DNA of 5,462 nt from assembly GCA_016748015.1 (NCBI GenBank), contig JAAOMT010000399.1, positions 1 through 5,462 on the forward strand, in the 5' to 3' direction. The notes under the pieces are model-generated. The model worked only from the letters and a program-made list of their open reading frames with translations, was not told the DNA's origin and made no database searches. How positions within the stretch are numbered: position 1 is the first letter of the stretch; every line of letters starts with the position of its first letter. This DNA is from Geosiphon pyriformis uo1. Lineage: Eukaryota > Fungi > Glomeromycota. Positions 1 to 5,462 of this stretch are shown here, one piece after another. The position numbers and the translations under genes are program-made.

Positions 1-2280
1 AGTTTGTTGGCAACATTCCTCTTCCATTCATAAGAAGACCACGGCCAACTTTTCGTTGAACACCAGTAACACCTTCCATCATCTAGTGTGCCGCAAGGAG
101 TTTGTTGACAACATTCCTCTTCCATTCATAAGAAGACCACAGCCAACTTTTCGTTGAACACCAGATAGACCTTCCATCCTCTGGTGTGCCGCAAGAAGTT
201 TGTTGGCAACATTCCTCTTCTATTCATAAGAAGACCACGGCCAACTTTTCGTTGAACACCAGTTAGACCTTCCATCCTCTGGTGTGCCGCAAGGGGTTTG
301 TTGGCAACATTCCTCTTCCATTAATAAGAAGACCACAGCCAAATTTTCGTTGAACACCAGATAGACCTTCCATCCTCTGGTGTGCCGCAAGGAGTTTGTT
401 GACAACATTCCTCTTCCATTCATAAGAAGACCACAGCCAACTTTTCGTTGAACACCAGTAACACCTTCCATCATCTAGTGTGCCGCAAGAAGTTTGTTGG
501 CAACATTCCTCTTCTATTCATAAGAAGACCACGGCCAAATTTTTGTTGAACACCAGATAGACCTTCCATCCTCTGGTGTGCCGCAAGGAGGTTGTTGGCA
601 ACATTCCTCTTCCATATATATAAGAAGACCACAGCCAACTTTTCGTTGAACACCAGATACACCTTCCATCCTCTGGTGTGCCGCAAGGAGTTTGTTGACA
701 AGATTCCCCTTCTATTCATAAGAAGACCACGGCCAACTTTTCGTTGAACACCAGATAGACCTTCCATCCTCTGGTGTGCCGCAAAAGGTTTGTTGGCAAC
801 ATTCCTCTTCTATTCATAAGAAGACCACGGCCAACTTTTCGTTGAACACCAGTTAGACCTTCCATCATCTGGTGTGCCGCAAGGGGTTTGTTGGCAACAT
901 TCCTCTTCCATTAATAAGAAGACCACGGTCAACTTTTCGTTGAACACCAGATAGGCCTTCCATCATCTGATGAGGCGCAAGGGGTTTTTTTGCGACATTC
1001 CCCTTCTAATCATAAGAAGACCACGGCCACTTTTTTCGTTGAACACCTGATAGACCTTCGGTCATCTGGTGTGCCGCGAGGGGTTTGTTGGCAACAATTC
1101 TCTTTTATCAGTAAGATGACCACGGCGAACTTTTCGTTGAACACCTGACAGACCTTCGGTCATCTGGTGTGCCGCGAGGGGTTTGTTGACAAAATTCTTC
1201 TCCTATTCATAAGAAGACCACGGCCAACTTTTCGTTGAACACCAGTAACACCTTCCATCCTCTGGTGTGCCGCAAGAGGTTTGTTGGCAACATTCCTCTT
1301 CCATTCATAAGAAGACCACGGCCAACTTTTCGTTGAATACCAGATAAACTTTCCATCCTCTGGTGTGCCGCAAGGAGTTTGTTGGCAACATTCCTCTCCT
1401 ATTCATAAGAAAACCACGGCCAACCTTTCGTTGAACACCAGATAGACCTTCCATCCTCTGGTGTGCCGCAAGGAGTTTGTTGGCAACATTCCTCTTCCAT
1501 TCATAAGAAGACCACAGCCAACTTTTCGTTGAACACCAGTAACACCTTCCATCATCTAGTGTGCCGCAAGGAGTTTGTTGACAACATTCATCTTCCATTC
1601 ATAAGAAGACCACAGCCAACTTTTCGTTGAACATTAGATAGACCTTCCATCCTCTGGTGTGCCGCAAGAAGTTTGTTGGCAACATTCCTCTTCTATTTAT
1701 AAGAAGACCACGGCCAACTTTTCGTTGAACACCAGATAGACCTTCCATTCTCTGGTGTGCCGCAAGGAGGTTGTTGGCAACATTCCCCTTCTATTCATAA
1801 GAAGACCACAGCCAACTTTTCGTTGAACACCAGATAGACTTTCCATCATCTGGTGTGCTGCAAGAAGTTTGTTGGCAACATTCCTCTTCTATTCATAAGA
1901 AGACCACGGCCACCATTTTGTTGAACACCAGATAGACCTTCGGTCATCTGATGTGCCCTAAGGGGTTTGTTTGCGACATTCCCCTTCTATTCATAAGAAG
2001 ACCACGGCCAACTTTTTTCGTTGAACACCAGATAGACCTTCCATCATCTGATGTGCCGCAAGGGGTTTGTTTGCGACATTCCCTTCTATTCATAAGAAGA
2101 CTACGGCCAGCTTTTTTCGTTGAACACCTGATAGACCTTCGGTCATCTAGCGTGCCGCAAGGGGTTTGTTGGCAAGAACCCTCTTCTATCCGTAAGAAGA
2201 CCACGGCTAACTTTTCGTTGAAAATCTGACAGACCTTCGGTCATCTGGTGTGCTGCAAGGGTTTGTTGGCAGCAATTCTT
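1..2280. repeat. Tandem (satellite-like) array of ~23 copies of a 98-bp monomer, truncated by the left window edge
   Basis: The anchor GTTGAA recurs at 55, 153, 251, 349, 447, 545, 645, 743, 841, 939, 1038, 1136, 1234, 1332, 1430, 1528, 1626, 1724, 1822, 1920, 2020, 2119 and 2217 (period 98, occasionally 99-100). Consensus: GTTGAACACCAGATAGACCTTCCATCCTCTGGTGTGCCGCAAGGAGTTTGTTGGCAACATTCCTCTTCTATTCATAAGAAGACCACGGCCAACTTTTC (46/98 GC). The last unit is partial and ends near 2280. Confidence 0.98.
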
Positions 2281-2928
2281 TTTGGAGATGCAGCAGCTAT
2301 TTGTTTTCCCCATAGAATAAAACTATGACTCGCCTTTAGTTTTCTCAGCATTTCGTTTTTACATTCTTTTTCTTTCGCGTTATTTATCTCGCTAAGCGCC
2401 TTGAGAATAAAAATATTTGAAAAAATACGGCTTGTAAATTTATGATACGGGTAAAGCCTGAAGTCGCGTAAAGAAGGAATTTTGAGAATCAGTCAAAAGA
2501 CGTCAGATAATATAGCAAAAAGTAAACACAATACGCATCTATGTGCACATTCTTGTCTTTTTTTTAATGTTTACAGGTATATATATGATATCACATATTT
2601 TAATAAAAATTTAATAATTCAATACATATGAATTTATTAATTCAAGTATTGAAAAAAATTAATAAAACAAAATAAGTTAACTTTATTTGAAAATAAGTGT
2701 TAATAATAATACTATGATAAATTTATTAATTAATATGTTAAAAATAACAGAATATTTTATAAAAATTATTTTATTAAATTTTGCATAAAATATTTAAAAA
2801 TTTACCATTTCTTTTATTTTGCATATGTTAATAGATTAATATATGTTCTACAAGTGTAATTCAACCACCAACTTTTTTAATATTATGAATAACATTAAAC
2901 AACTTAATAAATTATTTTATGTTCTATA
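2115..2928 (+). repeat. Left arm of a long inverted repeat (visible paired portion, 814 bp)
   Basis: Reverse complement of 4649-5462. Paired coordinates sum to 7577 at both ends (GTTCTATA ending 2928 / TATAGAAC starting 4649; C2118 / G5459), so there is no net indel. No mismatches found by eye. Confidence 0.97.
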
Positions 2929-4648
2929 GGATTTACTACATATAACATGTAATTAACCATTTAAGTACTTTAGATCAAACACAAAAAAGAATCTTTGTGC
3001 TTTCATTTTCTTAATACAGCTATTCAAATAACTGTCTTTAACAATAAACTCACTTATTTAATTTTTTATAGCTTTTATATTAGCTTTAATTTCTGTTTTT
3101 TGGTGTTTTTTAAAACCACCAAATTAGTAAAATCTAACTTAATAACTAAATTATTATTATTATTATTATTATACAATAAAATAGCACTAAGCTTCTCCTT
3201 AAATCTAAAGAACCTTTTAAACATAATAATTATTTTACTAAGATCCTTAATTTATGTTTTTACTAATAAGATATAAGAATCTGGTTTACAATAAAAACTT
3301 TTAACAGCCAAAAAAAAGCAACCAATACAATTAAGAAACCAATAGACTTAAATATAAATTTTATAAAACGAAATAATTTTTGCAATAAAGTTTTTAGATA
3401 AATCAATTTAGAATTTACAGCAATTTTAAGAAATAAAGCCATTTAATACAAAAAACAATAATCTCAAGATTTTAAAACAATATAAAAAACTTAATATCAG
3501 ATTTTGGTAAATTAATAAAGACAGTTTTATAGTTAAAAATCAAATAATTTAAACTTTAATACTTATATTAATGTTTATATTTAAAAGTTTTTATTAAATA
3601 TAACTCTTTCTAAAAATACTAACTTTAACAATTATAATAATAAAAACATTTTTAGATTTAAAAGTAACAATAGCAAATTTATGACAATAATTAAATTTAG
3701 AATATCAAAAAATGAAACAAGTTTAATTATCAATCTAAATAATTAGCTTTTTAATTTTAAAAAAAACATAGGCAAAAAAATTTAACCAATTTAGTTTTAA
3801 AAGTATCATAAAAAACAATTATATTTTTTAATTTAAAGAAAAAAATCAAGATATTATTTTTCAAAACTAATTGGTAAGCAAAAATTGTTTTAAAAGTTTA
3901 AAAAAATCAAAAATAAACAATAATATATTGTTATAAACTATTAAATTTTAAGTTATATTAAAAATATATCAAAAATTTTAAGAATATATTTAATATTATT
4001 AGTAAAATATTGAAAAAAACATTACAAAAAATTATAAGAGCAGAAACAAAAACAAATTCAAATATAATAATTAATTTTGCAATTTTGAAAATAGCAAAAA
4101 AAAGATTTAGTAAATATAATTTTGATAGTAGTATTTAAAAAAACTTAAAATGTAAATTTTATATAAAAAAGTTTAATATTGTGCTTTATAACCAATTTTA
4201 TTTTAATAAAATCATATATAAAACTTATTATACAGTTTTAATATAAATCATTTTAATTTTTACAATAGTATTAAATACAATCAAATATTAATCCAAATAA
4301 AATTTGGCAAATATATTATCATTGAAACAAAAAAAATTTAAGTATTATAATTAGTGCTATTATAATAAGATTAATAAAGATACTAAAGAAATTAAAATCC
4401 CTCAAAATTTTATTTTTACAAAAAAAAAGACAAATCTCAAATCAAAAAAAAATCAAAAACAATAAAAAAATTATTGTTTTTATATTTTAAAATAGCTGGT
4501 ATTAAATTTTTGAAAAAAAAGAATTGTTTTTTTGCTGTCTTGGTTTTTCTAGTACTTAAGTTGTTAATTACAGGTTATATGTAGTAAATCCTATATTTAA
4601 TGTATAATAATTAAGCTATATGAAAATCGTTGGTAATTAAATAACACT
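2929..4648. other. AT-rich central spacer/core (1720 bp) between the inverted arms, apparently non-coding
   Basis: GC was about 8-23% in the 60-bp lines counted. It has many A-tracts on the + strand and only one short low-complexity ORF in the six-frame track. Confidence 0.85.
3151..3171 (+). repeat. (TTA)7 microsatellite
   Basis: TTATTATTATTATTATTATTA read directly from the sequence. It accounts for the poly-Leu run in ORF 2995-3276. Confidence 0.9.
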
Positions 4649-5462
4649 TATAGAACATAAAATAATTTATTAAGTTGTTTAATGTTATTCATAATATTAA
4701 AAAAGTTGGTGGTTGAATTACACTTGTAGAACATATATTAATCTATTAACATATGCAAAATAAAAGAAATGGTAAATTTTTAAATATTTTATGCAAAATT
4801 TAATAAAATAATTTTTATAAAATATTCTGTTATTTTTAACATATTAATTAATAAATTTATCATAGTATTATTATTAACACTTATTTTCAAATAAAGTTAA
4901 CTTATTTTGTTTTATTAATTTTTTTCAATACTTGAATTAATAAATTCATATGTATTGAATTATTAAATTTTTATTAAAATATGTGATATCATATATATAC
5001 CTGTAAACATTAAAAAAAAGACAAGAATGTGCACATAGATGCGTATTGTGTTTACTTTTTGCTATATTATCTGACGTCTTTTGACTGATTCTCAAAATTC
5101 CTTCTTTACGCGACTTCAGGCTTTACCCGTATCATAAATTTACAAGCCGTATTTTTTCAAATATTTTTATTCTCAAGGCGCTTAGCGAGATAAATAACGC
5201 GAAAGAAAAAGAATGTAAAAACGAAATGCTGAGAAAACTAAAGGCGAGTCATAGTTTTATTCTATGGGGAAAACAAATAGCTGCTGCATCTCCAAAAAGA
5301 ATTGCTGCCAACAAACCCTTGCAGCACACCAGATGACCGAAGGTCTGTCAGATTTTCAACGAAAAGTTAGCCGTGGTCTTCTTACGGATAGAAGAGGGTT
5401 CTTGCCAACAAACCCCTTGCGGCACGCTAGATGACCGAAGGTCTATCAGGTGTTCAACGAAA
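4649..5462 (-). repeat. Right arm of the long inverted repeat, truncated by the right window edge
   Basis: Reverse complement of 2115-2928. It includes the AT-rich inner part, the unique 33% GC part and the first monomers of the inverted array. Confidence 0.97.
5297..5462 (-). repeat. Start of the inverted copy of the 98-bp array (about 1.7 monomers visible)
   Basis: Mirror of 2115-2280, carrying the same diagnostic variants (e.g. GACCGAAGGTC = reverse complement of GACCTTCGGTC; GATTTTCAAC = reverse complement of GTTGAAAATC). Confidence 0.95.

What the first reader, a model, noticed from the sequence alone, without database searches (positions are those of the whole stretch)
1..5462. Giant symmetric element: AT-rich core enclosed by identical inverted arms that run into inverted 98-bp arrays
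Seen: at least 814 bp of apparently perfect inverted identity around a 1720-bp AT-rich core. Composition steps from 47% GC (array) to 33% GC (2281-2580) to roughly 10-20% GC, and this is mirrored on the right. Established: a central core between inverted repeats is the layout of Schizosaccharomyces pombe (cnt/imr/otr), Komagataella phaffii and Candida tropicalis centromeres. It also occurs in foldback transposons (FB, TU) and at the centres of palindromic replicons such as Physarum or Tetrahymena rDNA. Inference: this is a structural chromosome element (centromere, replication-origin centre or foldback element) built on a monomer I do not recognise.
Basis: partly seen in the sequence, partly recalled or inferred. 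Interest (0 to 1): 0.8.

Follow-up and report, generated by a model that had tools for sequence, protein, structure and literature searches.

The report
26-kb non-coding palindrome in fungal chromosome
The window is the centre of a real, roughly 26-kb mirror-image duplication of gene-free, repeat-derived DNA in a fungal chromosome; it is a known kind of rearrangement, and nothing yet shows that it is a centromere, a transposon or a separate replicon.

Summary
A 98-bp satellite fills 1-2271. Arms 2115-2928 and 4649-5462 are perfect inverted copies (814 bp) around a 1,720-bp core of 16% GC.

The window is a whole 5.5-kb contig, C312, of a 128-Mb assembly. Earlier scan notes name the organism Geosiphon pyriformis, and published assembly statistics match.

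An independent k-mer assembly of the reads (same sample) supports both arm/core junctions. The arm has about twice the core's depth, and no other continuation appears.

The structure is larger than the window. Contigs C531 and C352 end in the same 9.4-kb sequence, and their last 276 bp equal the window's first 276 bp. Beyond that shared end their sequences are unrelated. This implies arms of about 12.1 kb around a 1.47-kb spacer.

Both arm edges are diverged while the interior is identical as assembled. This suggests an old inverted duplication homogenised by gene conversion.

The 98-bp monomer is the internal array of a dispersed non-coding element found at 15 or more other loci. None of these has an inverted partner within 10 kb. 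The spacer is a copy of a common AT-rich repeat.

The foldback-transposon and palindromic-replicon readings fail their tests. The centromere reading is untested. Unchecked scan notes report other inverted repeats in this genome, on other DNA. Interest is moderate to low.

The parts
1..2271 (+). 98-bp satellite array, 23.1 monomers, GC 45.8%. It is part of a reconstructed array of about 3.5 kb (about 35.8 monomers) with a weak 15-monomer higher-order period.
   Evidence: Tandem Repeats Finder. Positions 1-392 match 1474-1864 at 96%. Monomer identity by lag is 92.4% at lag 15 against about 88.5% at other lags.
1..276 (+). Exact 276-bp overlap with the last 276 bp of contigs C531 and C352. This links both contigs to the left end of this contig.
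   Evidence: Suffix-prefix test. It is the longest exact match between the two arrays, the next being 188 bp, and it is terminal on both contigs. The ends of C531 and C352 are identical.
2115..2928 (+). Left perfect arm, 814 nt. It holds 1.6 satellite monomers, the flank B, and an AT-rich stretch that includes the outer part of repeat segment T.
   Evidence: Depth of the arm contig is 192.8 against 75-101 for the core.
2272..2560 (+). Flank B, GC 34%. In this genome it is found only in this structure (two inverted copies). It has one old paralogue in C575 with the order upstream part, about 4 monomers, B.
   Evidence: Own-genome search. L023 is colinear with the reconstructed arm.
2929..3030 (+). 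Left inner, diverged part of the inverted repeat (inner part of segment T). It carries a 57-bp deletion at 2928/2929 relative to the right arm and to the paralogues.
   Evidence: Gapped alignment. Four-way alignment A1 with C595 and C625. Identity is 37/40, then about 68%.
3031..4496 (+). Single-copy spacer, 1,466 bp, GC 15%. It is the body of a dispersed AT-rich repeat family (F) and includes (TTA)7 at 3151-3171. No gene was found.
   Evidence: Colinear with C595 (window 2910-3696, 82%) and C625 (window 3005-4352, 69%). More than 40 further copies match at about 70%. Read-derived contigs have depth 75-101. No Rfam, tRNA or Pfam match.
4497..4591 (-). Right inner, diverged part of the inverted repeat (inverted copy of the inner part of T).
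   Evidence: It shares derived bases with the left copy against the paralogues (A1).
4592..4648 (-). 57-bp segment present in the right arm and in paralogues C595 and C625 but deleted from the left arm. TATA stands at both ends of the deletion.
4649..5462 (-). Right perfect arm, 814 nt, cut by the contig end. Its last 168 nt (5295-5462) are 1.7 inverted satellite monomers.
   Evidence: One unbranched read-derived contig covers 4649-5458 at depth 192.8, and the contig 4151-4678 bridges the junction.

Best explanation
The window is the centre of one large chromosomal palindrome, an inverted segmental duplication of about 26 kb.

Layout: flank P (C531), then an arm of about 12.1 kb, then a 1.47-kb AT-rich spacer, then the inverted arm, then flank Q (C352, reversed). 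Each arm holds about 6 kb of AT-rich DNA, the upstream part of a dispersed non-coding element, that element's 98-bp array expanded to about 36 monomers, its downstream flank B, and the start (segment T) of an AT-rich repeat F. The spacer is the body of that F copy.

Shown:
- both arm/spacer junctions;
- the 2:1 depth of arm to spacer;
- the two-copy status of the arm parts;
- the two different outer flanks;
- the diverged edges.

Inferred origin: a fold-back or template-switch event inside F copied everything to the left of it in reverse, leaving the loop as a single-copy spacer.

Inferred maintenance: arm-to-arm gene conversion has kept the interior identical or nearly so, while the short edges escaped and diverged. 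The 57-bp deletion would act as a barrier on the inner side.

Inferred consequence: recombination between the arms should also flip the spacer.

I see no evidence of a dedicated function. It most likely persists as a neutral structural feature of repeat-rich, gene-poor DNA.
For: - Perfect 814-nt arms and a 1,720-nt core.
- Read-derived contigs of run X1: contig 2899-3139 (depth 101) and contig 4151-4678 (depth 75) each bridge one junction by 30 nt. The arm contig 4649-5458 has depth 193, and the core contig 3184-4167 has depth 81. The contig 4151-4678 runs unbranched through 4648/4649, so no alternative continuation is seen.
- The spacer is colinear with paralogues C595 and C625, so the join across the (TTA)7 tract is natural.
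- C531 and C352 share 9,436 identical bp up to their ends, preceded by 44 bp at 40/44. Beyond that they are unrelated. This segment occurs exactly twice in the genome.
- The last 276 bp of both contigs equal window 1-276. This is the longest exact match between the arrays. No other locus has this array subtype: these are 91-95% identical to the window's array, all others 85% or less.
- The left and right inner copies share derived bases against the paralogues, and the paralogues lack any inverted terminal copy. The inner repeat is therefore a true old duplication, not a pair of transposon terminal repeats.
- The spacer size fits fold-back inverted duplications, which have spacers of 766-70,466 bp with a median of 3.4 kb (PMC3907307).
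- No ORF with a Pfam match, no tRNA and no Rfam family.
Against: - All read evidence comes from the same sample as the assembly and consists of k=31 contigs, not spanning long reads.
- The arm between window 277 and 2114 is represented only once, so the 12-kb arm is a graph-style inference. The array may be collapsed or mis-sized.
- 100% identity may be forced by assembly collapse.
- I have no genome-wide depth baseline, so 2:1 is a ratio, not a copy number.
- The diverged edges could also come from error-prone synthesis near the junctions of a recent replicative rearrangement (known in humans, from my own knowledge) rather than from long-term conversion.
- The inner junction is too blurred to show microhomology.
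- Absence of function is not demonstrated.
Confidence: 0.62

Rival explanations
1. It is an inverted-repeat regional centromere, as in S. pombe, K. phaffii and C. tropicalis. The AT-rich spacer would carry the kinetochore, and the identical arms and satellite would form the pericentric frame.
For: The layout matches: a 15% GC core between identical inverted arms, satellite further out, and no genes, tRNAs or ORFs with family matches. K. phaffii centromeres are a 2-kb inverted repeat around a 1-kb core and are unrelated in sequence between chromosomes, so uniqueness of the arms is no objection (PMC5010909). Centromeres of Glomeromycotina are unidentified: R. irregularis Hi-C maps show no centromere hotspots (10.1101/2021.08.12.456011).
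Against: There is no positive evidence beyond the layout. The 98-bp or 96-bp arrays at 15 or more other loci sit in ordinary dispersed elements without an inverted partner within 10 kb. The core is a copy of a common AT-rich repeat whose composition is typical of local intergenic DNA. Earlier scan notes list many other identical-arm inverted repeats in this genome, some enclosing genes (unchecked), so the layout is not distinctive here.
Confidence: 0.07
2. It is an assembly or library artefact. A chimeric fold-back molecule, or a graph mis-traversal, would have created the inverted right arm, while the true genome has only array, flank and AT-rich DNA.
For: The contig is only 5.5 kb. Perfect identity runs exactly to the contig end, and the arm may be one graph edge used twice. 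A natural short imperfect inverted repeat lies just inside the junction and could seed template switching.
Against: Both junctions have similar depth (101 and 75), the arm has about twice that (193), and the core-right contig does not branch at 4648. Two distinct unique flanks, P and Q, each lead into the same 9.4-kb arm sequence. A single-flank chimera does not predict this. The diverged inner copies share derived states.
Confidence: 0.1
3. It is a foldback-type transposon, like FB or TU elements, with very long terminal inverted repeats that contain tandem subrepeats.
For: Long inverted arms containing tandem repeats surround a non-repeated middle.
Against: Flank B and the 8-kb outer arm occur only in this structure. 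The bases outside the two outer ends are not a direct repeat. The arrays are internal, about 8 kb from the arm tips. No transposase is present. Other arrays of the family are not in inverted pairs.
Confidence: 0.04
4. It is the centre of an extrachromosomal palindromic replicon, like the Tetrahymena or Physarum rDNA molecules.
For: It has a palindromic centre with a non-palindromic middle.
Against: The arms end after about 12 kb in two different unique sequences that belong to contigs of 464 kb and 332 kb. No rRNA or other Rfam family is present. No telomere repeats occur in any fetched locus. The core depth (75-101) is not raised above that of the neighbouring unique contigs in this stretch, though I have no genome-wide baseline.
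Confidence: 0.02

Closest known systems
Fold-back inverted duplications with a single-copy spacer (human inv-dup rearrangements, PMC3907307; short-inverted-repeat-primed palindromes in Tetrahymena, yeast and mammalian cells, from my own knowledge)
   Same: Two inverted copies are separated by a kilobase-scale single-copy spacer: 1.47 kb here, against 766-70,466 bp with a median of 3.4 kb in the human cases. The junction lies in interspersed repeats. The far end of the duplication is joined to unrelated sequence.
   Different: Here the structure appears to be fixed in a fungal genome and looks old, since its edges are diverged. No terminal deletion or dicentric history can be seen, and the junction microhomology cannot be read.
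Large genomic palindromes kept identical by arm-to-arm gene conversion (primate X and Y ampliconic palindromes; from my own knowledge)
   Same: The arms are kilobases to tens of kilobases long, nearly identical, and surround a unique spacer. Identity is far higher than the apparent age of the duplication would allow.
   Different: Those palindromes carry testis-expressed genes that are thought to be under selection. This one has no detectable gene and is built from satellite and decayed repeats.
Inverted-repeat centromeres of K. phaffii (PMC5010909), C. tropicalis (PMC7292649) and S. pombe
   Same: An AT-rich core lies between identical inverted repeats. Repeats lie further out, as with S. pombe otr. 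Recombination in the arms would be expected to flip the core, as seen in K. phaffii.
   Different: There are no CenH3 or kinetochore data, no evidence for one such structure per chromosome, the arms are about 12 kb rather than 2-6 kb, and the satellite is not confined to such structures.
Foldback (FB) transposons of Drosophila and TU elements of sea urchins (from my own knowledge)
   Same: Long inverted arms that contain tandem repeats.
   Different: It is single-copy, has no target-site duplication, and the tandem repeats are not at the termini.

Membership tests
Fold-back inverted duplication / large genomic palindrome | Two inverted copies flanking a single-copy spacer | tested here: met
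   Arms are 814 nt perfect in the window. Arm depth is 193 against 75-101 for the spacer, and both junctions are bridged.
Fold-back inverted duplication / large genomic palindrome | Arms end in two different unique flanks (chromosomal context) | tested here: met
   C531 and C352 share 9,480 bp and then diverge completely. A 276-bp exact overlap links both to this contig. The link runs through the array and is inferred, not spanned by a read.
Fold-back inverted duplication / large genomic palindrome | Inverted (micro)homology at the junction between spacer and inverted copy | tested here: inconclusive
   Homology fades gradually at about 3030 and 4497, so no base-pair junction can be defined.
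Fold-back inverted duplication / large genomic palindrome | Interior more identical than edges (sign of arm-to-arm conversion) | tested here: met
   The outer edge is 40/44. The inner edge has a 57-bp indel, then 37/40, then about 68%. The interior is identical as assembled. Caveat: assembly collapse could hide sparse differences.
Inverted-repeat regional centromere (S. pombe, K. phaffii, C. tropicalis type) | CenH3 or kinetochore occupancy of the core | not testable with these tools
   No ChIP or Hi-C data are available here.
Inverted-repeat regional centromere (S. pombe, K. phaffii, C. tropicalis type) | One such structure per chromosome | tested here: inconclusive
   The other satellite loci checked have no inverted partner within 10 kb, but centromere inverted repeats need not share sequence (PMC5010909). 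I could not run a whole-genome census of inverted repeats.
Inverted-repeat regional centromere (S. pombe, K. phaffii, C. tropicalis type) | AT-rich, gene-free core between identical inverted repeats | tested here: met
   The spacer has GC 15% and no Pfam, tRNA or Rfam match.
Foldback (FB/TU) transposon | Multiple dispersed copies sharing the arm termini | tested here: not met
   Flank B and the outer 8 kb of the arm occur only in this structure.
Foldback (FB/TU) transposon | Target-site duplication outside the two ends | tested here: not met
   The bases just outside the two outer boundaries are not a direct repeat. The edges are eroded, so an old duplication could have been lost.
Foldback (FB/TU) transposon | Tandem subrepeats reaching the element's termini | tested here: not met
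   The array starts about 8 kb inside the outer arm boundary.
Palindromic extrachromosomal replicon (Tetrahymena or Physarum rDNA type) | Symmetry continues to telomere-capped molecule ends | tested here: not met
   Symmetry stops after about 12 kb at unrelated flanks in contigs of 464 kb and 332 kb. No TTAGGG runs were found.
Palindromic extrachromosomal replicon (Tetrahymena or Physarum rDNA type) | High copy number relative to the nuclear genome | tested here: inconclusive
   Only the within-stretch depth ratio is available. There is no genome baseline.
Palindromic extrachromosomal replicon (Tetrahymena or Physarum rDNA type) | Carries rRNA genes | tested here: not met
   No Rfam match at E up to 1.

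The most novel reading that the evidence does not exclude
This palindrome, possibly together with other inverted repeats around AT-rich cores in this genome, is an inverted-repeat regional centromere. It would be the first sequence-level centromere candidate in Glomeromycotina, a group in which Hi-C has shown no centromere signal.
Probability: 0.07. Interest if true: 0.8.

Novelty: new member of a known kind. Interest (0 to 1): 0.33.

Why it matters
- It turns an odd 5.5-kb orphan contig into a concrete scaffold join: C531, then C312, then C352 reversed, about 800 kb in all.
- It documents a palindrome with arms of about 12 kb in a mycorrhiza-type fungus, with a pattern that suggests ongoing arm-to-arm gene conversion.
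- If earlier scan notes are right that such identical-arm inverted repeats are common in this genome, then fold-back duplication followed by conversion may be a general force shaping it. It would also be a recurrent cause of assembly breaks.
- It gives a defined locus at which the open question of Glomeromycotina centromeres could be tested. The present evidence for that reading is layout only.

Tried and rejected
- Rfam over the whole window at E up to 1 gave nothing, so the monomer is not a known RNA gene.
- tRNA scans of the window and of the arm loci gave none, so there are no S. pombe-like imr tRNAs.
- Pfam on the six longest window ORFs and on two ORFs in flank P gave nothing. My impression that a flank-P ORF looks like a Tc1/mariner transposase is therefore unconfirmed.
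- A TTAGGG search in 17 satellite loci gave none, so the arrays are not shown to be subtelomeric.
- I tested whether the inner imperfect repeat is a pair of transposon terminal inverted repeats. It is not: paralogues C595 and C625 have the segment at one end only.
- I compared flanks P and Q with each other and with all fetched loci. They are unrelated.
By luck, one search found the outer boundary only 3 bp outside the piece I already held.
- The paper describing the genome (Curr Biol 2021) is not in the library. I therefore could not learn the sequencing technology or whether the DNA was amplified.
- Runs X2 and X3 of the same sample hold none of the stretch. Their type is unknown, so I draw nothing from this.
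No spliced model was needed.

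
Full report
**What the window is.** The 5,462 bases are the whole of contig C312 in a 128.3-Mb assembly of 792 contigs. Earlier notes of this scan name the organism Geosiphon pyriformis. I did not verify that by sequence. The published figures for that assembly (129 Mb, 795 scaffolds, 29.25% GC) fit (PMC9453076).

**Checking the observation.**
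- Tandem Repeats Finder reports one array at 1-2271, period 98, 23.1 copies, 88% matches.
- My ungapped comparison shows perfect complementarity for 2115-2928 against 4649-5462. The repeat tool's figure of 821 nt includes seven imperfect positions.
- GC is 45.8% in the array, 34.3% at 2272-2560, 13.6% at 2561-2928 and 16.2% in the core.
- The right arm runs into the contig end. Only 1.7 inverted monomers (5295-5462) are visible on that side.

**Is the inverted repeat real?**
- One public run, X1, from the same sample as the assembly, holds 98% of the sampled words of 2100-5462.
- Its independently built k-mer contigs include three pieces that matter. One covers 2899-3139 at depth 101. One covers 4151-4678 at depth 75. 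One covers 4649-5458 at depth 193.
- The first two each reach 30 nt into an arm, and both stop at mirror-image positions. This is the picture expected of a collapsed arm node with two exits, the two ends of the core.
- The arm has about twice the core's depth. The core contig 3184-4167 has depth 81.
- The contig 4151-4678 does not branch at 4648/4649, so the reads show no other continuation. A low-frequency chimera would not give this pattern.
- The read-derived contigs shown do not bridge the (TTA)7 tract at 3151-3171. Paralogous copies on C595 (window 2910-3696, 82%) and C625 (window 3005-4352, 69%) are colinear across it, so that join is natural.
- Limits: the evidence comes from the same sample, from contigs rather than reads, and without a genome-wide depth baseline. 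A graph assembler could also render arms of 99% identity or better as identical.

**The inner edge.**
- Gapped alignment shows that the repeat goes on inside the perfect arms.
- The right side has 57 bp (4592-4648) that the left lacks, with TATA at both ends of the gap.
- Then come 40 bp at 37/40 (2929-2968 against 4552-4591), then about 68% identity fading out near 3030 and 4497.
- In a four-way alignment, paralogues C595 and C625 have the 57 bp, so the left arm suffered a deletion (A1).
- In the 40-bp stretch the two window copies share bases that differ from both paralogues. They are therefore copies of each other, not two independent insertions.
- The paralogues carry this segment at one end only and have no terminal inverted repeats. 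The core is therefore not a transposon with inverted ends.
- The unpaired spacer is 3031-4496: 1,466 bp, 15% GC.

**The structure is larger than the window.**
- The array subtype of this window occurs elsewhere only at the ends of contigs C531 (464 kb) and C352 (332 kb). Those arrays are 91-95% identical to the window's, against 85% or less for all other loci.
- Those two contig ends are identical to each other over 9,436 bp, up to the last base. Just outside that lie 44 bp at 40/44, and beyond that the contigs are unrelated.
- The shared segment occurs exactly twice in the genome.
- The last 276 bp of both contigs are exactly the first 276 bp of this window. This is the longest exact match between the arrays, the next being 188 bp, and it is terminal on both sides. 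That is the signature of neighbouring pieces in an assembly graph.
- The arm parts are present twice, the spacer once, and two different outer flanks exist. The simplest solution is therefore flank P, arm, spacer, inverted arm, flank Q.
- The arms come to about 12.1 kb (9,204 + 2,928 bases) and the whole to about 26 kb. The reconstructed array is 3,509 bp, about 35.8 monomers, with a weak 15-monomer period.
- This step is inference: no single contig or read spans it, and the array could be collapsed.

**What the parts are.**
- The monomer is not specific to this locus. Related arrays lie at 15 or more other loci. They have a 96-bp unit, often as a 193-bp dimer.
- In at least 13 of these loci the array sits inside a conserved, multi-kilobase, non-coding dispersed element. 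Its flanks are shared on both sides at 85-96% identity, and it also carries 141-bp and 24/54-bp arrays.
- None of these loci has an inverted array within 10 kb, and none has telomere repeats. Many lie near contig ends.
- Flank B (2272-2560) is otherwise unique. It has one old paralogue on C575 with the order upstream part, about four monomers, B. B therefore belongs to a diverged copy of the same kind of element.
- The spacer belongs to an AT-rich family with more than 40 copies at about 70% identity.
- The window and arms contain no Rfam family, no tRNA and no ORF with a Pfam match.

**Most likely mechanism.**
- Two inverted copies, a kilobase-scale single-copy spacer, a junction in interspersed repeats, and a far end joined to unrelated DNA make up the anatomy of a fold-back or template-switch inverted duplication.
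- In 21 sequenced human cases the spacer was 766-70,466 bp with a median of 3.4 kb. Some junctions lay in inverted LINE or Alu pairs (PMC3907307).
- Here both edges are diverged: the outer at 40/44, the inner with an indel, then 37/40, then about 68%. More than 10 kb of interior is identical as assembled.
- A single recent event would leave the edges as clean as the interior. I therefore infer an older duplication whose interior is kept uniform by arm-to-arm gene conversion. The short edge pieces, cut off by the 57-bp heterology on the inner side, would drift.
- An alternative, from my own knowledge, is error-prone synthesis close to the junctions of a recent replicative rearrangement.
- Recombination between the arms should also invert the spacer, as reported for K. 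phaffii centromere cores (PMC5010909). Short contigs cannot show this.

- Foldback transposon: not supported. The arm sequences exist only here, there is no target-site duplication, the arrays lie 8 kb inside the tips, and there is no transposase.
- Palindromic replicon: not supported. The symmetry stops at two unique flanks inside large contigs, there is no rRNA, and the depth ratio is a plain 2:1.
- Centromere: open. The layout fits the K. phaffii and S. pombe type. Uniqueness of the arms is no objection, because K. phaffii centromeres are unrelated to each other (PMC5010909). Glomeromycotina centromeres are unknown: R. irregularis Hi-C shows no centromere hotspots (10.1101/2021.08.12.456011).
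- Layout is the only evidence for the centromere reading. The core is an ordinary copy of a common repeat. Unchecked scan notes list many other identical-arm inverted repeats in this genome, some around genes. I put this reading at about 7%.

**Verdict.** The feature is a real, large, non-coding chromosomal palindrome, a new member of a known kind. Interest is moderate to low unless the centromere reading is confirmed.

Noticed in passing
window 1-276; L027 (C531:455000-464371) and L028 (C352:323000-332432): Contigs C531 and C352 end in the same 9,436 bp, and both overlap the start of C312 by 276 exact bases. This suggests a scaffold join of C531, C312 and reversed C352, about 800 kb in all.
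   Followed up: yes
L029 (C560:264000-273999) 2760-6171; also L030-L043: A dispersed non-coding element of more than 6 kb carries several tandem arrays: 141 bp, 24/54 bp CT-rich, and 96 bp as a 193-bp dimer. It occurs at 13 or more loci with flanks 85-96% identical, many within a few kb of contig ends. I did not determine its class, and found no LTRs, terminal inverted repeats or ORFs within 10 kb.
   Followed up: partly
L031 (C555:54500-64499) about 5430-6170: A run of N (a scaffold gap) lies inside the satellite array. It produces spurious long ORFs in several frames.
   Followed up: partly
window 3370-4520; L004-L010: An AT-rich dispersed repeat family (here called F) has more than 40 copies at about 70% identity across many large contigs. 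It has no ORF and no terminal inverted repeats, and its class is unknown.
   Followed up: partly
L044 (C531:453439-457638) 557-709 and 791-1108, minus strand: Two short ORFs in flank P look to me like fragments of a Tc1/mariner-type transposase (a W..VVW.DES..F-like motif). Pfam gave no match at E up to 0.01, so this is unconfirmed.
   Followed up: partly
L023 (C575:824046-827068) 726-1667: An old paralogue (65-72% identity) has the arrangement upstream part, about 4 satellite monomers, flank B. It may show the state of the array-bearing element before the array expanded.
   Followed up: partly
window 2100-5462: Runs X2 and X3 from the same sample hold essentially none of this stretch. Their library type is not on record, so I cannot say whether this means the locus is not expressed or the runs are of other material.
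   Followed up: no
window 4618-4673 and 4694-4749 (mirror 2828-2883): Two copies, 80% identical, of a roughly 56-bp unit lie 76 bp apart in the terminal segment of the AT-rich repeat. One copy straddles the boundary between the perfect and imperfect parts of the arm.
   Followed up: partly
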